Of a DNA stretch of 64,000 nucleotides, positions 4,873-16,542 are shown piece after piece (within the stretch, counting starts at the first letter, position 1; each line of letters begins with the position of its first letter). Below the pieces are notes generated by a model. That model was not told where the DNA came from and searched no databases. It saw only the letters and a list, made by a program, of their open reading frames with translations. Location of the stretch: positions 1-64,000 of the IMG/VR virus record IMGVR_UViG_3300029922_000001; one strand, given 5' to 3'. Made by a program: the position numbers and the translations under genes.

Positions 4873-5756
4873 TGAAAAGATTTATTAAAGGATTGTATAA
4901 ACCAAATTACCCATGTGTTTTGTCAAGGTATTTTACAAATTTCAGTAAACTCAGAAAGATGAAAATTCTTTCTGAGGACTTCATAGTAGATTTCGCTGAT
5001 GATTTAGATTGGTTTTACCTAAGTGAAGAACAGCCTTTGTCTGAAGACTTCATTCGAAGATTTCAGGATAAAGTTAATTGGCATAATATATCTGAATCTC
5101 AGAAGTTATCAGAAGACTTTATTAGAGAATTTAAAGAAAAAGTTGATTGGTATTATATTTCAATGTATCAGAAGTTATCAGAAGATTTTATGAGGGAATT
5201 TCAAGATGAAATACACTGGCACTATGCGTGTAAACATCAAAAAATGTCCGTAGATTTCATGAGAGAGTTTAAGGATAATATGCTATGGGATTATGTATCA
5301 AAATATCAGAATTTATCAGAAAGCTTTAAACTTGAATTTAGTAATTTCCTTTTCAAGAGAATGTTAAATCCACAAAATAATTGGCTTTATCGCTCTGTGT
5401 ATTCTAAACGTCAGCACCTTTTGGATTATTATGAATTGGATGGTGATTATATTATCGCCTATAAAACTACTCGTAAAAATGGATATTCAGTATTCAATTT
5501 CCAGCATAGATATGAAGTTGGAAAGGAATATGAAGCACATTGTGATTTTAATGCCGATAATGAGGCTAGTTTTGGATTAAGTGCTTGGACTAGAGAAAAT
5601 GCATTAAGATATCATAGTCGTGGTGATCTTTATGAAGTTCGAATTCACCTTGATGATGCTGTTAAAGTGGATAGCTATCACAAGATTCGATGTTCAAAAT
5701 TCACAGTCGTAAGAAAACTAAAGATTAAACGTAGAGAAAGAAAAGCTTCAGACTAA
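4869..5756 (+). CDS. 22-aa Trp-repeat protein (LSEDFIREFxDKVxW) with conserved phage C-terminal domain
   Basis: About six tandem repeats followed by a YKTTR...YEVGKEYE...FGLS domain. Confidence 0.75.
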   Translation: MMKRFIKGLYKPNYPCVLSRYFTNFSKLRKMKILSEDFIVDFADDLDWFYLSEEQPLSEDFIRRFQDKVNWHNISESQKLSEDFIREFKEKVDWYYISMYQKLSEDFMREFQDEIHWHYACKHQKMSVDFMREFKDNMLWDYVSKYQNLSESFKLEFSNFLFKRMLNPQNNWLYRSVYSKRQHLLDYYELDGDYIIAYKTTRKNGYSVFNFQHRYEVGKEYEAHCDFNADNEASFGLSAWTRENALRYHSRGDLYEVRIHLDDAVKVDSYHKIRCSKFTVVRKLKIKRRERKASD

Positions 5757-6553
5757 TTAGTTTGAAGCTTTTCTTTGAATCTTGATATTACATTGAGTAA
5801 ATGTACATTGAGTTTACTATCAATGTCGAGTTCGTCCCAGAGAGGTTGTACTGATTCTGGATACTTTGCTTCATAAAGTGAAGCCGCAATAGCCGCATTT
5901 GTGTCTGTGTCTCCACCAAAGCTAATTGCTAATCTAATTACCTCTTCAATGCTAGTGCCGTTGAAAAACGAATGTAGAATGACTGGCATACAAGCTTCAC
6001 AGCTTGCCATGTGTAATTTACTAATTTTCTTCTTGTTAACTGTTTTCCATTTATAATCGCTAGTTCTTTTAATGAAGTCATTAATATACTTTTTACTTTC
6101 ACCATTGCGAAGATAAAAAATGGCTGCTGCAATTGTATTACTAGCCATTAAAGATTCTTCATGTCTATGTGTATACATAATTGATTTAGTAACATTAAGA
6201 AGAGTTCGTTCAATGGTTTTTTCGGTGTGTCCGATTGGACTAATTCGCATAATACAGCCATTGCCATAACTATCTAATTTAGTCATTTTTTCATGTGATG
6301 GGGTTGATGCCCATGTTCTAAATGCTTTACCATATCCTAGCTTCGGATAGACTTCGTAATATGCTTTATAGTATTCAGCAAAATTTTCTGAAGTGGGTTT
6401 TGGAAATTCTAAAAGAACTTCGGCTGTAGCACAAGTAAGTGCTGTATCGTCTGTAAAGTGAATATTGGGTGTATTCATTTCGAAATTAATATCGACTTCT
6501 GGTTGTGCTTCGAATACACTACCGATAATATCGCCTAAAATAGCTCCGCGCAT
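5753..6553 (-). CDS. ADP-ribosylglycohydrolase (DraG/ARH family)
   Basis: GAILGDIIGS, FTDDT, GNGCIMRISP and GGDTDT motifs; start moved to ATG 6553 (TATAAT-N6-ATG on the minus strand). Confidence 0.9.
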   Translation of the reverse strand: MRGAILGDIIGSVFEAQPEVDINFEMNTPNIHFTDDTALTCATAEVLLEFPKPTSENFAEYYKAYYEVYPKLGYGKAFRTWASTPSHEKMTKLDSYGNGCIMRISPIGHTEKTIERTLLNVTKSIMYTHRHEESLMASNTIAAAIFYLRNGESKKYINDFIKRTSDYKWKTVNKKKISKLHMASCEACMPVILHSFFNGTSIEEVIRLAISFGGDTDTNAAIAASLYEAKYPESVQPLWDELDIDSKLNVHLLNVISRFKEKLQTN

Positions 6554-6590
6554 TATGCTATTATACCTCAATATAAGATATAATAGAGGA

Positions 6591-7055
6591 ATGGAAACTA
6601 AACAAGTCATAGTAGTAAGAACACAATACCCAGATGGGAAAGGTGGAACTAAAAAGCTTAGAACGGGAAAACTCATAGCTCAAGCGGCTCATGCTTCAAT
6701 GTCTTTTTTGACGCGAAGAATTAATGCTAGATTAAATAGTGTTTCATATAAAGATGTTGATGGTGAGCCAATTGCATATATTGTTGAAGGACCATTGTAT
6801 GCAAATTTTTGTTTAACTCCAGAAGAAGAACATTGGTTAGATAATTCTTTTAAGAAAATTTGTGTGTATGTTAATTCTGAAGAAGAATTATTAGATATTT
6901 ATAATAAAGCTAAAGAAGCTGGATTAGAAGTACATCTTGTTGAGGATTCAGGGCTTACGGAATTTCATGGAGAGAAAACTAATACTTGTCTTGCAATTGG
7001 TCCACATGAATCTTCTCGAATTGATGTAATTACTGGTCATTTACCTTTATACTAA
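6591..7055 (+). CDS. pth2: peptidyl-tRNA hydrolase, Pth2 type
   Basis: KQVIVVR, GKLIAQAAHAS, KKICV, DSGLTE, TCLAIGP and IDxITGHLPL; start moved to ATG 6591. Confidence 0.92.
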   Translation: METKQVIVVRTQYPDGKGGTKKLRTGKLIAQAAHASMSFLTRRINARLNSVSYKDVDGEPIAYIVEGPLYANFCLTPEEEHWLDNSFKKICVYVNSEEELLDIYNKAKEAGLEVHLVEDSGLTEFHGEKTNTCLAIGPHESSRIDVITGHLPLY

Positions 7056-7121
7056 TAATATGGATGAAAACATTTTAAAAGCAGAATACGATTTAATTAA
7101 CGAAAAAAGTCTCAAAAGACA

Positions 7122-7149
7122 TTGACAAAACCCAAAAAATGGGTATAAT
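7122..7149 (+). promoter_or_regulatory. sigma70-type promoter of the tRNA operon
   Basis: TTGACA (7122-7127), N16, TATAAT (7144-7149): both hexamers are consensus. Confidence 0.85.
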
Positions 7150-7170
7150 AGAACAGTAAGGTCGAAAAAT

Positions 7171-7296
7171 ATGAAAGCAATCAACACTAATATGAATAGC
7201 GAAATGAATGAAGTTAACGCAAATGTAAATACTACATCTGCTTACCCATATCATCCATACCCCTATCATCCTAAGTGGCGAAACACTTTGGTTTAA
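7171..7296 (+). CDS. putative attenuator leader peptide (41 aa, Tyr/Pro/His run)
   Basis: MKAINTNMNSEMNEVNANVNTTSAYPYHPYPYHPKWRNTLV*; AAGGT upstream; below the ORF-track size cutoff. Confidence 0.8.
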   Translation: MKAINTNMNSEMNEVNANVNTTSAYPYHPYPYHPKWRNTLV

Positions 7297-7323
7297 GACG
7301 ATTTACTAAAAATCAGATTCAAC

Positions 7324-7368
7324 GAAAAGGGTTCTCGCTAGAAAAAGTGAGAACCCTTTTCTGTTTTT
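7324..7368 (+). terminator. intrinsic terminator (attenuator) between leader peptide and tRNA array
   Basis: 16-bp stem GAAAAGGGTTCTCGCT/AGTGAGAACCCTTTTC, 6-nt loop, then TGTTTTT. Confidence 0.85.
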
Positions 7369-7384
7369 GAAAATCAAATAAAAT

Positions 7385-7447
7385 GGTAAAGTACATCCGG
7401 TGATGAACCCGTTCTGTGAAAACGGGTGTGGGGATCGGCTACCCCAC
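7385..7447 (+). pseudogene. truncated tRNA-His(GTG)-like element lacking the 3' acceptor strand
   Basis: D stem CATC/GATG, anticodon arm CCCGTT-CTGTGAA-AACGGG and a T-like hairpin; no complement to the 5' GGTAAAG before CGAGA. Confidence 0.55.
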
Positions 7448-7458
7448 GAGATAAAATA

Positions 7459-7530
7459 TCACAATATGGTGTTATGTTGACATACTTCCTGTGGTGGGAG
7501 AGATGTAAGTTCAATTCTTGCTGTTGTGAC
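7459..7530 (+). tRNA. tRNA-His(GTG)-like, irregular anticodon arm
   Basis: Acceptor TCACAATA/TGTTGTGA; T arm GTAAG-TTCAATT-CTTGC; anticodon region CTTCC-TGTGGT-GGGAG (TGG/Pro reading less likely). Confidence 0.6.
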
Positions 7531-7541
7531 CGAGATATATA

Positions 7542-7607
7542 CTAGGATGCCCAAGGTGGGAATTGCGGTTGTGACCCGCAATGACGGGATCGTTACCCGG
7601 TCCTAGA
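7542..7607 (+). tRNA. tRNA-His(GTG), compact
   Basis: Acceptor CTAGGAT/GTCCTAG; anticodon arm TTGCGG-TTGTGAC-CCGCAA; T arm CGGG-ATCGTTA-CCCG. Confidence 0.7.
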
Positions 7608-7619
7608 CGAGAAAAAAAT

Positions 7620-7701
7620 GGCGTAGCGATGCAGTTGGAGAGGCATGACGGTCTGTAAAATCGTTCCTTCGGGTGAATCGGTTCGAATCCGATATGCGCC
7701 A
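7620..7701 (+). tRNA. tRNA-Tyr(GTA)
   Basis: Anticodon loop CTGTAAA; long variable arm CCTTCGGG; T arm ATCGG-TTCGAAT-CCGAT. Confidence 0.85.
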
Positions 7702-7717
7702 CCGAGATAAAATAAAA

Positions 7718-7789
7718 CGGGATATAGCCAAGTGGTATGGCGCGAAGTTAGGGGCTTCGAGTTCTGGTGTTCGATTCACCATATCCCGA
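7718..7789 (+). tRNA. tRNA-Pro(AGG)
   Basis: Acceptor CGGGATA/TATCCCG plus A73; anticodon arm CGAAG-TTAGGGG-CTTCG; T arm TGGTG-TTCGATT-CACCA. Confidence 0.85.
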
Positions 7790-7800
7790 CGAGAATAAAT

Positions 7801-7880
7801 GGACGTATCGCATAGCGGCAATTGCGGAAGGCTGTAACCCTTCTCCTTCGGGTTCGTAAGTTCGAGTCTTACTGCGTCCA
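7801..7880 (+). tRNA. tRNA-Tyr(GTA)
   Basis: Acceptor GGACGTA/TGCGTCC; anticodon arm GAAGG-CTGTAAC-CCTTC; variable arm CCTTCGGG. Confidence 0.9.
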
Positions 7881-7890
7881 CGAGATAAAT

Positions 7891-7962
7891 CTAGTTGTAT
7901 ATCAATTGGTAGATTTCGCCGTTTGGATCGGTGAGGCTGGAGGTTCGAGTCCTCTCAACTAC
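7891..7962 (+). tRNA. tRNA-Pro(TGG), 3' end lacks G72/A73
   Basis: Anticodon arm CGCCG-TTTGGAT-CGGTG; T arm GGAGG-TTCGAGT-CCTCT; acceptor TAGTTG/CAACTA. Confidence 0.75.
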
Positions 7963-7974
7963 GAGATAAAATAT

Positions 7975-8085
7975 GGCGCGTATAGCAGTTACGGTTTTAC
8001 GGTTAGCTGCGCGGTCTGTTAAGTATGGGTATTTAACAAAACCGATGCCGAAAGGCTGATATGGATTCGACTTCCTCACGCGCCA
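7975..8085 (+). tRNA. type II tRNA-like RNA (probably Tyr) with an 18-nt insertion in the anticodon loop
   Basis: Acceptor GGCGCGT/ACGCGCC plus A; variable arm GCC-GAAA-GGC; anticodon region CGGT-CTGT[18 nt]AAA-ACCG. Confidence 0.6.
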
Positions 8086-8173
8086 CGAGATGTATGACGG
8101 TAATTGGCTGCCGCCTGGTTTTGGAAACCAGAGTTATAAAAATACACTGCAAGTTCGAATCTTGTCATCTCGC
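8086..8173 (+). tRNA. tRNA-Pro(TGG) with long variable region
   Basis: Acceptor CGAGATG/CATCTCG; anticodon arm CTGGT-TTTGGAA-ACCAG; T arm GCAAG-TTCGAAT-CTTGT. Confidence 0.75.
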
Positions 8174-8887
8174 GAGAATATTATTTGTTTTTCTTTGAAT
8201 TATTGTTTGAATTAAATCCACAACAATCTTTTTATATTTTTCCTTACTGTTAGTGTTTAAATACTTGCAAGACGATGAATCTATAATACATAATTCAATA
8301 TTTTGTTGATAACAATTTATTATTTTATTATTATCATTATTTTTAATTTTTTCAAATTTATTATTTCCATAAATTGGTTCATAGTGAAATATGCCATTTA
8401 GTTCAATAGCAAATTTAAGCTCTGGAAAATAAAAGTCTAATTCAGAATTAATAATAGATTTATCATTACATATTAATAATAAATCAGGGTATAAAATTTT
8501 AATTTGTTCTTCTAAGTATATTTCTAATTTGGATCTTCTAGTTCCATGAGTTTTATGTTTATTGTTATAAGTTGCTGAACATGATTTACTGCAAAATACA
8601 TTTTTTGTTTTACTTTTATTTAATTCTCCGTTATTTCTTTTTGTGTATTTATTACACTCTTTACAAAAAGTATTTATTGATCCATGACCACGATCTAAAT
8701 TATTTTTATTTGCTACACACTTCATACTACATACCATTGGTCTATTTAATTTATAACTTTCATTAATTTTTGACTTAGCTCTATTGAAAATATTATTACA
8801 CTGAGGACAAATTAATAAAACTAAGTCGTTTCCTCTTAAATTACATATATATTCATTAGGTATATTATTAGCATATGGTATATTCAT
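8165..8887 (-). CDS. free-standing putative homing endonuclease (Cys-rich Zn modules + Vsr/DUF559-like PD-(D/E)xK domain)
   Basis: CxxC...CSxxC repeats; ELDFYFPELKFAIELNGIFHY; start moved to ATG 8887. Confidence 0.7.
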   Translation of the reverse strand: MNIPYANNIPNEYICNLRGNDLVLLICPQCNNIFNRAKSKINESYKLNRPMVCSMKCVANKNNLDRGHGSINTFCKECNKYTKRNNGELNKSKTKNVFCSKSCSATYNNKHKTHGTRRSKLEIYLEEQIKILYPDLLLICNDKSIINSELDFYFPELKFAIELNGIFHYEPIYGNNKFEKIKNNDNNKIINCYQQNIELCIIDSSSCKYLNTNSKEKYKKIVVDLIQTIIQRKTNNILAR

Positions 8888-9006
8888 ACTATATATTTCG
8901 AATATACAATTTCGACTCCTGCTACATAGATTTAAATTACTCAATTAATAAACCACCGTGTGGTTATTGGGCAAAACAAAAAGCTTTATAGGAGTTATAA
9001 TAAGAC

Positions 9007-9860: not shown

Positions 9861-10949
9861 TTAAAATTTAACTTTAATCTTCCTGACATATTGCGGATTA
9901 AGTAAAATAGGCATAGTTTCTGTTGATACTAAATATCCCATATGTGTAGGCGGTTTATCACAAGGAACTGAAGTAATCTTTCCCTTAATAGCATAAGCAC
10001 CAAGAAATTGGGCGGGAGGTAAAACATAAATTTCTCCATCTTCTATATCCGCAGAATAATGCATATCGGTCCATCCATAATGTCCAACAAGTCCTATCAT
10101 CATAATATCTCTCTGTGTACCTTGTTCAAAATCTTTTTCATTAAAGTATTGTTTGCACAACCTGAATGTTTTAGGAGTCATAATCATTTTTGCAGCAAGT
10201 AAATCGTTGTTTTCAATTTCATTAATACTATCTTGTATAGCTCTATCTACAGTTTCCACATAAGTATATATGGTTTGATCAAAATTGGCGGCTTCTTTAA
10301 TAAGTGAAAATATTGCTTGATTTTCTTGTTTTTGGATTGAATCTTTAGCTTCGCATTGCATTTGATCAAACAAATAATATCTTCTTTTATTAAATTCTTC
10401 TGTCGTGACTAATGGGTTGTCTTTAAAAAAAGTGAAATCTTTAATGATTTCTTCATCATTAGGAATATATGGTTTTATTTCACCATTTGAATAGTAAATT
10501 GATTTTGTTCCTTCTTTAATTTGATAAATAGGATCAACACCCGAAGGAAGTTCGTCTACCAGTAATATTTTCCTTGCAACTGATTGATATAGTAAAGATG
10601 CATTAATAGCATCAACCATAGAGTTTCCGAGAGAAATTCTACCTTCTTCAGTAGTGAGTATATGCGCTGTGCTATCACGATAAAATACTGATATTAATTG
10701 GTCTGATGTTAATTCTTTGTGAGATTCTGATAATGTTAGAATGTCATCAGTTAAATTCGTTTGCCAACCAACACTTTGATAAACAATAGAAACTTGTTTT
10801 TTTGCATTAGGGTCTGTGTTTTCGTTAAATCGAAAAGTGAATGGAGCTTCTTCGGAATATGTTTGAAGCTTTTTGTCGATAATGTCAATAAGTTTATTGA
10901 CGGCTGTTTCAACTCTCTTTTGAGAGATTTCTTGTGGTCCTATGGGCAT
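9861..10949 (-). CDS. divergent HK97-fold major-capsid paralog with extra N-terminal domain
   Basis: YQSVARKILLVDELPSG, NP...RRY...AKDSIQKQEN..IF, IExNDL..AK, TQRDI...GLVG and GEIYV..PAQFLG resemble jumbo-phage MCPs; AGGAG before ATG 10949. Confidence 0.65.
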   Translation of the reverse strand: MPIGPQEISQKRVETAVNKLIDIIDKKLQTYSEEAPFTFRFNENTDPNAKKQVSIVYQSVGWQTNLTDDILTLSESHKELTSDQLISVFYRDSTAHILTTEEGRISLGNSMVDAINASLLYQSVARKILLVDELPSGVDPIYQIKEGTKSIYYSNGEIKPYIPNDEEIIKDFTFFKDNPLVTTEEFNKRRYYLFDQMQCEAKDSIQKQENQAIFSLIKEAANFDQTIYTYVETVDRAIQDSINEIENNDLLAAKMIMTPKTFRLCKQYFNEKDFEQGTQRDIMMIGLVGHYGWTDMHYSADIEDGEIYVLPPAQFLGAYAIKGKITSVPCDKPPTHMGYLVSTETMPILLNPQYVRKIKVKF

Positions 10950-11036
10950 ATTTTTCTCCTTTGCACACTTCAATTCAAGATTGCAAGTGCTGCAACAATA
11001 TCTTTATACAAATTCTAAAACGACGTACAATAACTT

Positions 11037-14877: not shown

Positions 14878-16542
14878 ATGAGTAAAATCGCACAATACGT
14901 AGGAAATCGTAATAAAAACAAAAACAAGATCGTCAAACCATATATCTCTCAGGGACAACCTTATGACGAAACACAAGTTAAGAACTCCAATGGAGGATAC
15001 GTATATAAAGTCGGTAATTGGGATCAATTAGTAAGATTTCTCATTTTGGGAACAATTTCAGGAACTTACTACATCAAAGAAAGTGAACTAACTGTTCTAA
15101 ATTATGATGTCATCTTGGATTGTCTCAAAGAAGATGGCGTAAGAGTTGTAAATGAAATTTTGCGTGTGTCTGAAGGTGGATTGGCACCTAAAAATGATTT
15201 TGCAGTTTTTGCACTTGCAGTTGCTGCCGCACATGGTAATGAACAAACTAAACAACTAGCTTATGAAGTCTTGCCAAGAGTATGCCGTATTGCAACACAT
15301 TTATTCCAATTTTTGGAAGATTCTAAAGCATTTAGAGGACGTGGTAACGGTTTTAATCGTGCTATTCGTCGTTGGTACACTAATAAAACCATTGATCAAC
15401 AAGCTTATCAAATGGTTAAATATCGTTCACGAAACAGTTGGTCACACCGTGACGTGTTGAGAACAATACGTATCAAACCAGAAAACGTTGAAGCATCCGC
15501 TTTATATGGTTGGGCTGTTACTGGAGAATGGAAGCCAGGTAAGATTGAAATTAATGTTGATGGTCATGTACTATTACTATCAAATGGCTTTGATGTTGCT
15601 AAGCCAAAGATTATTGAAGGATTTGAAAAGTCCCAAGCTGCTACTTCTACTAGTGAACTAGTTAAGGTAATTAAGCAATATGATCTTACATGGGAAGCTG
15701 TGCCAACACAGTATCTTAAAGATAAGAGTGTATGGGAAGCTTTGCTATCCAACACTCCCCCAATTGCTTTGATGCGTAATCTTGGTAATATGTCTAGTGC
15801 CGGTGTCTTTGATGCTGGTGAGTGGGATAATACCAAATTAGCAATTGATACTTTAACTAATGTTGAAAAACTTAGAAAGAATCATTGTCACCCTATGCAG
15901 TCTGTAATTGCACAAATTACTTATGCTCATGGTGGAGGATTTAAGGGAAGTAACACTTGGGCTGTGAACCCCAAATTAGTCGATGCATTAAATGATTCGT
16001 TCTATGCATCAATGCAAGCAATTGTGCCAACTGGTAAGAAATTCCTAGTAGGTGTTGATGAATCTCAGTCTATGACTCAGGCTAGTGCTGTTTCAGGATT
16101 AAACTGTAAAGAAGCTGCGGCTATTATGGCATTAACTACTTACGTTGCGGAACCTAATTGTCAGGTTATCTTCTTCGATACCAAATATCGTGAAGAAGAA
16201 AAATTGAGTAAGCACATGAGTTTAAATGACGCTAAGAAACTCGCTCGTGATGGTGGAGGTACTAATTTGAACTTACCTATGCAATATGCATTGGATAAAA
16301 AGATTAAAGATATTGATGTCTTCGTTGTCTTCACTGACAATGAGACATATGGTAATGGACGACATACTCAAGACTTATTTAATGAATATCGTAATACATA
16401 TAATGCAAACGCCAAATTGATTGTATGTTCTATGATGGCTAATGTTTATACTGTAGGAGATATTAAAGATCCACAAATTCTTCAAGTAGTAGGTTTGGAT
16501 GCATCGCTCCCGAAAATAATTAGCTGTTTTGTTTTAGCGTAA
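14878..16542 (+). CDS. rsr: Ro60/Rsr TROVE-domain RNA-binding protein
   Basis: QVKNSNGGYVY, LVRFLILG..GTYY, KYRSRNSWSHRDVLR, ALMRNLG; vWA motifs DxSxSM, GGT, VFTDNET and VVGLD; AGGAG SD. Confidence 0.95.
   Translation: MSKIAQYVGNRNKNKNKIVKPYISQGQPYDETQVKNSNGGYVYKVGNWDQLVRFLILGTISGTYYIKESELTVLNYDVILDCLKEDGVRVVNEILRVSEGGLAPKNDFAVFALAVAAAHGNEQTKQLAYEVLPRVCRIATHLFQFLEDSKAFRGRGNGFNRAIRRWYTNKTIDQQAYQMVKYRSRNSWSHRDVLRTIRIKPENVEASALYGWAVTGEWKPGKIEINVDGHVLLLSNGFDVAKPKIIEGFEKSQAATSTSELVKVIKQYDLTWEAVPTQYLKDKSVWEALLSNTPPIALMRNLGNMSSAGVFDAGEWDNTKLAIDTLTNVEKLRKNHCHPMQSVIAQITYAHGGGFKGSNTWAVNPKLVDALNDSFYASMQAIVPTGKKFLVGVDESQSMTQASAVSGLNCKEAAAIMALTTYVAEPNCQVIFFDTKYREEEKLSKHMSLNDAKKLARDGGGTNLNLPMQYALDKKIKDIDVFVVFTDNETYGNGRHTQDLFNEYRNTYNANAKLIVCSMMANVYTVGDIKDPQILQVVGLDASLPKIISCFVLA

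What the first reader, a model, noticed from the sequence alone, without database searches (positions are those of the whole stretch)
7122..8177. Leader-peptide attenuator controlling a phage tRNA array that matches the leader's own codons (Tyr/Pro/His)
Seen: a consensus sigma70 promoter (7122-7149) precedes a 41-codon ORF with ten consecutive codons TAC CCA TAT CAT CCA TAC CCC TAT CAT CCT (YPYHPYPYHP, 7243-7272). A strong intrinsic terminator (7324-7368) follows, then nine tRNA elements read as His x3, Tyr x3 and Pro x3; two assignments (7459 and 7975) are ambiguous. Just after the run, GCGAAACACTTT (7278-7289) is a near copy of the terminator 3' strand (GTGAGAACCCTTT), so it can pair with the 5' strand AAAGGGTTCTCGC as an antiterminator. 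Established: this is the logic of trp/his-type ribosome-mediated attenuation, normally used for amino-acid biosynthesis and aminoacyl-tRNA synthetase operons. Inference: a ribosome stalled on the Y/P/H run leaves 7278-7289 free and permits read-through, while translation to the stop masks it and allows termination. The phage would then make replacement tRNAs only when these tRNAs are depleted, for example by host anticodon nucleases or starvation. I do not know of a described attenuator whose output is the sensed tRNAs themselves.
Basis: partly seen in the sequence, partly recalled or inferred. Interest (0 to 1): 0.96.

Follow-up and report, generated by a model that had tools for sequence, protein, structure and literature searches.

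The report
Leader-peptide attenuators controlling phage tRNA arrays
A 441-kb uncultured peat phage places a short "sensor" reading frame and a transcription stop signal in front of its tRNA gene clusters. Each sensor is rich in exactly the codons its own cluster decodes, so the phage probably makes each tRNA set only when that tRNA runs short.

Summary
The window has a 12/12 sigma-70 promoter (7122-7149), a 41-codon ORF (7171-7296) with ten consecutive Tyr/Pro/His codons, a 15-bp terminator (7324-7361 plus T-run), and then nine tRNA-like elements carrying only His, Tyr and Pro anticodons.

The attenuation reading is strongly supported in silico.
- The same 441-kb genome has parallel leaders. 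One has a Leu run before an all-Leu array, one is Lys-rich before a Lys array, and one has a 14-codon Ser/Thr/Cys run upstream of the Ser/Thr and Cys arrays. A relative has an Asn leader before five tRNA-Asn genes.
- Leader-to-array matching is the best of 120 permutations.
- The Y/P/H and Lys leaders are conserved as reading frames in relatives whose neighbouring proteins are only 55-61% identical. Indels are in-frame, some changes are synonymous, and the terminator stems are rebuilt.
- In every leader, the 5' arm of a predicted antiterminator lies where a ribosome at the stop codon would cover it and one stalled on the run would not.

No expression data exist. The literature searches found no description of a leader-peptide attenuator whose output is tRNA. 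I class it as a new variant of classical ribosome-mediated attenuation.

The parts
6591..7055 (+). Upstream neighbour: PTH2-type peptidyl-tRNA hydrolase. Not part of the switch. Used as the anchor to find relatives.
   Evidence: Pfam PF01981, E 1e-27. Synteny with L136 and L149.
7122..7149 (+). Sigma-70-type promoter, TTGACA-16-TATAAT.
   Evidence: 12/12 match. Conserved in L149 and L136 (alignment A2).
7157..7161 (+). Shine-Dalgarno-like TAAGG, 9 nt before the ATG.
   Evidence: Sequence. An equivalent purine-rich box lies before the ATG in L136 and L149.
7171..7296 (+). Leader ORF, 41 codons, ending ...YPYHPYPYHPKWRNTLV*.
   Evidence: Conserved as an ORF of 36 codons in L149 and 38 codons in L136, with in-frame indels and synonymous changes.
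7243..7272 (+). Regulatory run: ten consecutive Tyr/Pro/His codons.
   Evidence: Such a run occurred in 0 of 300,000 random windows. Eight of the ten codons are kept in L136.
7276..7289 (+). 5' arm of the antiterminator. It pairs with 7326-7340 and lies within about 15 nt of the stop codon 7294-7296.
   Evidence: Nascent-transcript minimum-energy fold, -13 kcal/mol. The equivalent pairing in L136 is -24.9 kcal/mol. The core TGGCGA / TCGCTA is invariant.
7324..7369 (+). Intrinsic terminator: stem 7324-7361 plus T-run.
   Evidence: L136 has a 17-bp terminator with an unrelated stem sequence at the same place. L149 keeps the same terminator.
7394..7447 (+). Element 1: tRNA-His-like fragment with a GTG anticodon arm and a T-like arm but no acceptor stem.
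   Evidence: Fold. Not called by ARAGORN or Infernal. Phage D has a complete tRNA-His at this position.
7460..7529 (+). Element 2: tRNA with an irregular anticodon loop, reading GTG (His) or TGG (Pro).
   Evidence: Infernal tRNA model, 35.8 bits. Fold.
7542..7608 (+). Element 3: tRNA-His (GTG), short, with the unusual T-loop ATCGTTA.
   Evidence: ARAGORN. Fold. The same T-loop occurs in L136.
7620..7703 (+). Element 4: tRNA-Tyr (GTA).
   Evidence: ARAGORN.
7718..7790 (+). Element 5: tRNA-Pro (AGG).
   Evidence: ARAGORN. Infernal, 56.5 bits.
7801..7881 (+). Element 6: tRNA-Tyr (GTA).
   Evidence: ARAGORN. Infernal, 50.4 bits.
7890..7964 (+). Element 7: tRNA-Pro (TGG).
   Evidence: ARAGORN. Infernal, 45.9 bits.
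7975..8085 (+). Element 8: tRNA-Tyr (GTA) with an 18-nt hairpin insert (8020-8037) in the anticodon loop.
   Evidence: Cloverleaf fold, z = -3.2. A homologous element with a compensating insert hairpin occurs in L136. The insert is absent from L149.
8087..8173 (+). Element 9: tRNA-Pro (TGG) with a long variable arm.
   Evidence: Relaxed ARAGORN. Infernal matches it as tRNA-Sec-like at 24 bits, below threshold. Fold.

Best explanation
This is a classical ribosome-mediated (trp/his/leu-type) transcription attenuator whose regulated genes are tRNA genes.

Proposed mechanism: host RNA polymerase starts at the consensus promoter, and a ribosome translates the leader.
- If charged Tyr-, Pro- and His-tRNAs are plentiful, the ribosome runs to the stop codon at 7294-7296. 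There it covers 7276-7289, so the terminator 7324-7361 forms and transcription stops before the array.
- If any of these tRNAs is scarce, the ribosome stalls on the early or middle part of the Y/P/H run. That leaves 7276-7289 free to pair with 7326-7340 as an antiterminator, and polymerase reads through into the His/Tyr/Pro tRNA array. The new tRNAs relieve the stall, which closes a negative-feedback loop.

The device is one of a set. The phage sorts its tRNA genes into arrays by amino acid and gives several arrays their own cognate leader (Y/P/H, Lys, Leu and Ser/Thr/Cys in this genome; Asn in a relative).

Shown by computation: sequence anatomy, codon/anticodon matching, conservation, and predicted alternative folds. 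Inferred: leader translation, stalling, termination and read-through, and the physiological trigger.
For: Anatomy: see the observation check.

Codon/anticodon matching in independent units:
- Leu leader, G000 275832-275758 (minus strand). It has 8 Leu in 24 codons, four of them consecutive (p about 4e-4). A 15-bp terminator follows, and a predicted -20 kcal/mol antiterminator has its 5' arm in the last six codons. The array behind it is all Leu.
- Lys leader, 171887-171925, behind a 12/12 promoter, followed by the Lys array.
- Ser/Thr/Cys leader, 255263-255174. A run of 14 such codons occurred in 0 of 300,000 random windows. It has a terminator and an antiterminator that a ribosome at the stop codon would mask. 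It lies upstream of the Ser/Thr and Cys arrays.
- Asn leader in phage D, L149 2524-2592, followed by a terminator. The antiterminator is the equilibrium minimum-energy fold when a ribosome is placed on the Asn run, and the terminator is the fold when it is placed at the stop codon. Five tRNA-Asn genes follow.
- The leader-by-array enrichment matrix has the true pairing ranked best of 120 permutations.

Conservation:
- The Y/P/H leader is present in phage D (L149) and in phage B (L136, whose PTH2 is 61% identical). The run and the (K/R)WR(N/D)xL tail are kept, the N-terminal half has diverged, length differences are multiples of three, and there are synonymous TAC/TAT and CCA/CCC changes. The terminator stem sequence is entirely different but still 17 bp.
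- The Lys leader M(K/R)TM(D/G)LKLKRKR is kept in relatives whose neighbouring protein is 55-59% identical. It shows synonymous AAA>AAG and CTT>TTG changes. The cores of two mutually exclusive helices are conserved, including a G-U to A-U change and a G-U to G-C change.
- The Leu leader starts with GTG in G000 and with ATG at the same codon in phage D.

Other points:
- The window has no promoter-like site of 9/12 or better between the terminator and the first tRNA.
- Arrays without a leader (Met, amber suppressor, Arg) have a promoter directly abutting the tRNA. The long leaders are therefore a feature of particular arrays, not generic spacers.
- In 162 tRNA arrays from 154 other loci, the top-scoring matching leaders all come from this phage clade. 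The only comparable scores elsewhere are Leu-rich ORFs before mixed arrays in L028 and L031, which I did not follow up.
Against: - There are no expression data. No RNA run could be listed, and the DNA runs from other peat samples carry no variants.
- The window's antiterminator duplex is not stronger than shuffled sequence (p 0.24). At equilibrium the terminator always wins, so the switch must be kinetic.
- A stall on the last three codons of the run would cover the antiterminator arm.
- The Lys unit has only a weak hairpin (-9 kcal/mol) with a T-run. The simple scan does not call it a terminator, and it is unclear in L147.
- The Lys, Leu and Ile leaders lack a Shine-Dalgarno sequence. They start 6-9 nt after the -10 box, so they would have to be translated as leaderless mRNAs.
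- The Ser/Thr/Cys leader is separated from its arrays by a second promoter-like site and three protein genes.
- L136 has a 9/12 promoter-like match just after its terminator.
- Two of the nine window elements are not functional-looking tRNAs.
- The Ile(ATA) leader is statistically weak.
Confidence: 0.78

Rival explanations
1. The ORF with its terminator is an independent small gene encoding a micro-protein. The tRNA array is transcribed from its own unrecognised promoter, for example a phage-specific middle or late promoter. The codon match is then coincidental or reflects something other than regulation.
For: Phage-specific promoters would not be seen by a sigma-70 scan. L136 has a weak 9/12 site after its terminator. 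A TGGTAAAGT motif at 7384-7392 loosely resembles the TGGTATAAT boxes found at other tRNA promoters of this genome.
Against: The match between leader composition and array identity recurs in five or six independent units. The TGGTAAAGT motif is not conserved in phage D or phage B. The conserved part of each peptide is the codon run plus the segment that forms the antiterminator arm, while the rest diverges. Antiterminators sit in the same geometry in all units.
Confidence: 0.07
2. It is a translation-coupled attenuator, but it reports general translation capacity or amino-acid starvation (any slowing of ribosomes), or intrinsic slow Pro-containing peptide-bond formation. It does not report the supply of the specific tRNAs.
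For: Leader attenuators respond to charged tRNA, so amino-acid starvation would also give read-through. Pro-rich stretches are intrinsically slow to translate (established knowledge). The Ser/Thr/Cys unit also contains an IF3-like gene.
Against: Each leader uses the codons of its own array (Leu, Lys, Asn, Ser/Thr/Cys, Tyr/Pro/His) rather than a common slow motif. Making more tRNA would not relieve amino-acid starvation, whereas it would relieve tRNA shortage.
Confidence: 0.1
3. The leader RNA senses tRNA directly, without translation, as a T-box-like or other riboswitch. The codon run would serve as a specifier.
For: T-box leaders also end in terminator/antiterminator pairs and are matched to one tRNA (established knowledge).
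Against: No T-box or other cis-regulatory family matched in 7000-8400, even at E up to 10. The leaders are only 40-130 nt long. The reading frame, start codon (GTG to ATG), in-frame indels and synonymous changes are conserved. A run of ten codons for three different amino acids is not a single specifier.
Confidence: 0.03

Closest known systems
Leader-peptide transcription attenuators of enterobacterial amino-acid operons (trpL, hisL, leuL, thrL, pheL, ilvL) and of pheST (pheM)
   Same: Promoter, a short ORF with a run of regulatory codons, an intrinsic terminator, and an overlapping antiterminator whose 5' arm is masked by a ribosome that reaches the leader stop codon. The Leu leader here has four consecutive Leu codons, like leuL. 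The mixed Ser/Thr/Cys and Tyr/Pro/His runs recall the mixed Thr/Ile run of thrL.
   Different: The regulated products are tRNA genes, the sensed molecule itself, rather than biosynthetic enzymes or a synthetase. The devices sit in a phage, as a set of parallel units with one per amino-acid-specific tRNA array. Three leaders appear to be leaderless mRNAs. There is no sequence homology to the enterobacterial leaders.
T-box riboswitches
   Same: They sense the state of one tRNA species and switch between a terminator and an antiterminator to control translation-related genes.
   Different: T-boxes bind uncharged tRNA directly, need no translation, have a conserved 14-nt T-box sequence and specifier loop, and control synthetase, transporter or biosynthesis genes. 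None of these features is present here.
Phage tRNA arrays of T4, T5 and mycobacteriophages, discussed as codon compensation or as replacements for tRNAs cut by host anticodon nucleases (PMC10264068)
   Same: Clusters of phage tRNA genes, here including Lys and Tyr. From memory rather than from anything read here, Lys and Tyr are the tRNA species reported as targets of host anticodon nucleases.
   Different: In the searches made here, those arrays are not described as being under leader-peptide control or as sorted into amino-acid-pure, separately regulated units.
E. coli tRNA-Phe gene pheV (checked as a possible precedent)
   Same: A tRNA gene whose product takes part in pheA and pheST attenuation.
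   Different: In K-12 the promoter abuts the tRNA, with no leader ORF and no attenuator.

Membership tests
Ribosome-mediated (leader-peptide) transcription attenuator | A promoter followed by a short translatable ORF upstream of the regulated genes | tested here: met
   12/12 promoter, Shine-Dalgarno, 41-codon ORF. The ORF is conserved in two relatives, with in-frame indels and synonymous changes.
Ribosome-mediated (leader-peptide) transcription attenuator | A run or enrichment of codons cognate to the regulated pathway | tested here: met
   Ten consecutive Y/P/H codons before a His/Tyr/Pro array (0 of 300,000 random windows). The same logic holds for Leu, Lys, Asn and Ser/Thr/Cys. The true pairing is the best of 120 permutations.
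Ribosome-mediated (leader-peptide) transcription attenuator | A Rho-independent terminator between the leader ORF and the regulated genes | tested here: met
   Window 7324-7361 plus T-run. Also found for Leu, Asn, Ser/Thr/Cys, L136 and L149. For the Lys unit there is only a weak hairpin with a T-run.
Ribosome-mediated (leader-peptide) transcription attenuator | A mutually exclusive antiterminator whose 5' arm is covered by a ribosome at the leader stop codon but left free by a ribosome stalled on the regulatory codons | tested here: inconclusive
   Predicted in every unit with the right geometry, and thermodynamically clear for the Asn unit. The window's duplex alone is no better than shuffles, and these are folding predictions only.
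Ribosome-mediated (leader-peptide) transcription attenuator | Read-through increases when the cognate charged tRNA is limiting and depends on leader translation | not testable with these tools
   No RNA run could be listed. The phage is uncultured.
T-box riboswitch | Match to the T-box leader model (stem I specifier loop, conserved T-box sequence in the antiterminator) | tested here: not met
   No T-box hit in 7000-8400 at E up to 10.
tRNA genes (array members) | Cloverleaf recognised by ARAGORN or the Infernal tRNA model | tested here: met
   Seven of nine elements are recognised. 7975-8085 is a cloverleaf only if the 18-nt insert is set aside. 7394-7447 fails because it has no acceptor stem.

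The most novel reading that the evidence does not exclude
A clade of huge peat and freshwater phages runs a per-amino-acid 'tRNA regulon'. tRNA genes are sorted into isoacceptor-family arrays, and each array sits behind its own leader-peptide attenuator. The phage therefore measures, codon family by codon family, whether the infected cell can still decode, and it tops up only the tRNAs that are failing. Possible causes of failure are host anticodon nucleases, host shut-off, or a codon-usage mismatch. These would be the first attenuators whose output is the sensed tRNA itself, forming a closed homeostatic loop. They would also be direct genomic evidence that phage tRNAs are expressed on demand.
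Probability: 0.65. Interest if true: 0.92.

Novelty: new variant of a known kind. Interest (0 to 1): 0.88.

Why it matters
Why phages carry tRNA genes has been argued for about fifty years, with codon compensation set against replacement of tRNAs destroyed by host defences (PMC10264068). A demand sensor wired in front of each array says the phage treats its tRNAs as a conditional supply, switched on by failure to decode the matching codons. That turns the question into something measurable.

It also extends leader-peptide attenuation in three ways: to RNA genes as the output, to viruses, and to a multi-channel arrangement in one genome. The leaders are compact, natural, orthogonal sensors of individual tRNA pools and could be used as reporters. 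Finally, the leaders give an independent read-out of the amino-acid identity of odd tRNA-like elements, such as those with anticodon-loop inserts or irregular loops, that standard tools cannot assign.

Tried and rejected
- Degenerate DNA patterns for the Y/P/H run in viral contigs and genome contigs gave only unrelated repeat-protein frames with no tRNAs nearby, or nothing.
- A T-arm plus CGAGATAAA trailer pattern in viral contigs gave single chance hits and no relatives.
- PTH2-anchored loci from viral and metagenome collections are too distant, at 57% identity or less. They carry mixed arrays without leaders.
- No RNA-seq runs could be listed.
- Reads from four other peat samples are identical to the window, so there is no population variation to exploit.
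- The 59-aa ORF inside the Leu array has no homologues, and its exact-match look-up returned only an apparently identical copy of this locus, with the same gene order and TnpB insertion.
- The whole 295-kb record of phage D could not be searched.
- Column-wise covariation counting on the Y/P/H terminator was uninformative, because the L136 terminator is not positionally alignable.
- Relatives of the IF3-like protein in IMG/VR are 36-40% identical and lack a leader.
- E. coli pheV, checked as a possible precedent, has no leader.
- The Ile(ATA) leader (G000 239454-239380) has two ATA codons next to a hairpin and a C-rich tract. I considered it a sixth unit, possibly Rho-dependent, but it is statistically weak (p about 0.05-0.09) and was not found in relatives.
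Full report
**What the window is**

The window is the first 64 kb of a single 441,498-bp contig with 33.9% G+C. The contig is a JGI peat-metagenome assembly, Ga0302280_1000004. It is a huge phage. A major-head-protein homologue lies at 9861-10973, and a homing endonuclease and a Ro60/TROVE-like RNA-binding protein lie nearby. The genome also carries a tmRNA, two amber-suppressor tRNAs and about 25-40 tRNA genes.

**The observation**

- Promoter: a full-consensus site, TTGACA-16-TATAAT, at 7122-7149.
- Leader: an AAGG Shine-Dalgarno and a 41-codon ORF at 7171-7296. Codons 25-34 are TAC CCA TAT CAT CCA TAC CCC TAT CAT CCT.
- Terminator: a 15-16-bp stem at 7324-7361 followed by a T-run.
- Array: nine tRNA-like elements up to 8173, each followed by CGAGA.

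ARAGORN and Infernal recognise seven of the nine: His GTG, Tyr GTA twice, Pro AGG, Pro TGG twice, and one with an irregular anticodon loop. Element 7975-8085 is a tRNA-Tyr carrying an 18-nt hairpin inside its anticodon loop. Element 7394-7447 is a His-like fragment without an acceptor stem. Every readable anticodon in the array is His, Tyr or Pro. A run of ten Y/P/H codons never appeared in 300,000 random 41-codon windows of this genome's own coding sequence.

**The switch in the window**

At equilibrium the terminator always forms. I also folded the transcript as it exists before the terminator's 3' arm has been made. This duplex alone is not stronger than shuffled controls (p about 0.24), so it is not evidence on its own.

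The geometry fits a trp-type switch. A ribosome at the stop codon 7294-7296 would cover the antiterminator arm. A ribosome stalled on about the first seven codons of the run would not, but one stalled on the last three would. No promoter-like site of 9/12 or better lies between the terminator and the first tRNA. No T-box or other known cis-regulatory RNA matches.

**The decisive test: other arrays in the same genome**

The genome sorts its tRNA genes by amino acid, and several arrays have their own leader.
- **Leu** (275832-275758, minus strand). A -10 box is followed by a 24-codon ORF with eight Leu, including CTC CTA CTA TTA in a row (p about 4e-4). A 15-bp terminator follows. A predicted -20 kcal/mol antiterminator has its 5' arm in the last six codons of the ORF. 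An all-Leu array follows.
- **Lys** (171887-171925). A 12/12 promoter precedes the ORF MKTMDLKLKRKR. Behind it is a five-segment relay of alternative helices. With a ribosome placed on the Lys codons, the fold gives a helix that ties up the 5' arm of the final hairpin. With a ribosome at the stop codon, the fold gives the final hairpin and its T-run. That final hairpin is weak, and the simple scan does not call it a terminator.
- **Ser/Thr/Cys** (255263-255174, minus strand). A genome-wide screen of promoter-proximal short ORFs turned this up. It is a 29-codon ORF with a 14-codon run of Ser, Thr and Cys, which occurred in 0 of 300,000 random windows. It has a strong terminator and a -10.9 kcal/mol antiterminator that a ribosome at the stop codon would mask. 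It lies upstream of an IF3-like gene, a Tpt1/KptA-like gene and a third gene, and then the Ser/Thr array and two tRNA-Cys genes. A second promoter-like site lies after the terminator, so this link is looser.
- **Ile** (239454-239380). A leader with two ATA codons precedes tRNA-Ile(TAT), but it is only suggestive.
- **Arrays without leaders.** For Met, the amber suppressor and Arg, a promoter directly abuts the tRNA.

**Relatives**

No close relative exists in IMG/VR or in the phage collection. Protein-anchored look-ups in Logan and ENA assemblies found four.
- **Phage D** (ENA ERZ19399147; loci L149 and L153) is syntenic with the window.
  - It has the same Y/P/H leader with a 15-nt in-frame deletion, the same terminator, and an array of about twelve His/Pro/Tyr elements.
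  - Its Leu leader starts with ATG where G000 has GTG.
  - It has an extra unit that G000 lacks: a 22-codon leader with AAT AAT AAT and two further Asn codons, then a terminator, then five tRNA-Asn genes. In this unit the antiterminator is the equilibrium minimum-energy fold when the ribosome is placed on the Asn run. The terminator is the fold when it is placed at the stop codon.
- **Phage B** (Logan ERR10034876; loci L136 and L147) has neighbouring proteins only 55-61% identical.
  - It keeps the Y/P/H unit: promoter, Shine-Dalgarno, and a 38-codon ORF ending ...PYHPYPYHLRWRDALG.
  - Its 17-bp terminator has an unrelated stem sequence, and it has a -24.9 kcal/mol antiterminator.
  - The array behind it is His/Pro/Tyr.
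- **Phage B, phage C (L145) and a near-identical strain (L142)** all keep the Lys leader as M(K/R)TM(D/G)LKLKRKR. They show synonymous AAA>AAG and CTT>TTG changes. The helix cores are conserved, including a G-U to A-U change and a G-U to G-C change.

**Statistics across units**

I scored each leader's enrichment for the amino acids of each array. The true pairing is the best of all 120 permutations of five leaders and five arrays, which is the smallest p-value this test can give. A screen of 162 tRNA arrays in 154 fetched loci placed only this clade's leaders at the top. The only comparable scores elsewhere are Leu-rich ORFs before mixed arrays in L028 and L031, which I did not follow up.

**Interpretation**

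The best-supported explanation is classical leader-peptide attenuation applied to tRNA genes. Shortage of the cognate charged tRNA stalls the leader ribosome, the antiterminator forms, and the array is transcribed. Ample tRNA lets the ribosome reach the stop codon, the terminator forms, and transcription ends. Because the output is the sensed molecule, each unit is a closed feedback loop.

The physiological trigger remains an inference. Candidates are host anticodon nucleases, loss of host tRNA synthesis after shut-off, or a codon-usage mismatch. The genes near the arrays fit a phage heavily invested in tRNA upkeep but do not identify the trigger. They include PTH2 and Ro60-like genes in the window, IF3-like and Tpt1-like genes in the Ser/Thr/Cys unit, and Thg1 and an RNA ligase in relatives.

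**Weak points**

- Nothing here shows translation, termination or read-through, and no RNA data could be found.
- The Y/P/H antiterminator is modest.
- Three leaders would need leaderless initiation.
- The Lys terminator is weak.
- The Ser/Thr/Cys unit has an internal promoter-like site.
- The relatives are few and fall into one clade, so cross-genome covariation rests on five or six unit types.

**Comparison with what is known**

The device works like the trpL, hisL, leuL, thrL and pheL attenuators and meets their structural criteria. It is not homologous to them, and it differs in output (tRNA genes), in setting (a phage) and in being deployed as a parallel set. It is not a T-box.

Seven full-text searches found no description of a leader-peptide attenuator in front of tRNA genes. 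E. coli pheV, checked directly, has none. This means 'none found', not 'none exists'.

**Verdict**

This is a new variant of a known mechanism, of high interest.

Noticed in passing
window 7975-8085 (insert 8020-8037); L136 3040-3143; L149 12016-12100; L147 8733-8828; G000 about 275381-275484: Several tRNAs of this phage clade carry 14-22-nt hairpin inserts inside the anticodon loop. The Tyr insert sits at the same place in G000 and phage B, with a different but still self-complementary sequence. It is absent from the phage D copy. This looks like a mini-intron or a protective insert, not a group I intron.
   Followed up: partly
window 7447-8177 (nine sites) and all other arrays of G000: The tRNA genes of G000 do not encode CCA. 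Each is followed by CGAGA plus an A/T-rich spacer ending in AT just before the next tRNA, and the motif also precedes the first tRNA of promoter-proximal arrays. Phage B encodes CCA instead. This is probably a processing signal. A pattern search found no other phage that uses it systematically.
   Followed up: partly
window 7394-7447: The first element of the array has a tRNA-His-type anticodon arm and a T-like arm but no acceptor stem. Phage D has a complete tRNA-His at this position. It may be a decayed gene or a tRNA-like decoy.
   Followed up: partly
G000 172380-172700 (L138 2380-2700); also G000 316850-317180: RNA-sized stretches of unknown nature lie inside tRNA arrays and are bounded by the same CGAGA spacers. 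One is about 330 nt, between tRNA-Lys(CTT) and tRNA-Gln, and is conserved in L142. The other is two repeats of about 130 nt after tRNA-Met. The only Rfam signal is a weak (14 bits) match to part of the 23S rRNA model.
   Followed up: partly
G000 255263-253572 (L141): The unit headed by the Ser/Thr/Cys leader contains an IF3-like gene, a Tpt1/KptA-like RNA 2'-phosphotransferase gene and a DUF4326-like gene before the Ser/Thr tRNA array. These names are my reading of the translated sequences; no family search was run on them. If they hold, translation and RNA-repair proteins may share the attenuator.
   Followed up: no
window 5753-7055 and 14878-16542; L142 10024-10827; L149 17522-18139: tRNA and RNA maintenance genes cluster around the arrays: an ADP-ribosylglycohydrolase, PTH2 and a Ro60/TROVE-like protein in the window, and Thg1 (adds G-1 to tRNA-His) and an RNA ligase in relatives.
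   Followed up: no
G000 275929-277275; window 8165-8944; L136 4689-5627: Mobile genes sit right next to the arrays: IS605-type TnpB beside the Leu array and in L136, and HNH or homing endonucleases beside the Y/P/H and Leu arrays. L142 and L145 have an extra 41-codon ORF inserted between the Lys terminator and the first tRNA, which G000 lacks.
   Followed up: no
G000 239454-239345 (L140): The candidate Ile leader ends in TTC ATA AGT ATA CGC TAA. The last codons lie inside a 9-bp hairpin, which is followed by a C-rich, G-poor tract rather than a T-run. This could be a Rho-dependent variant of the same idea.
   Followed up: partly
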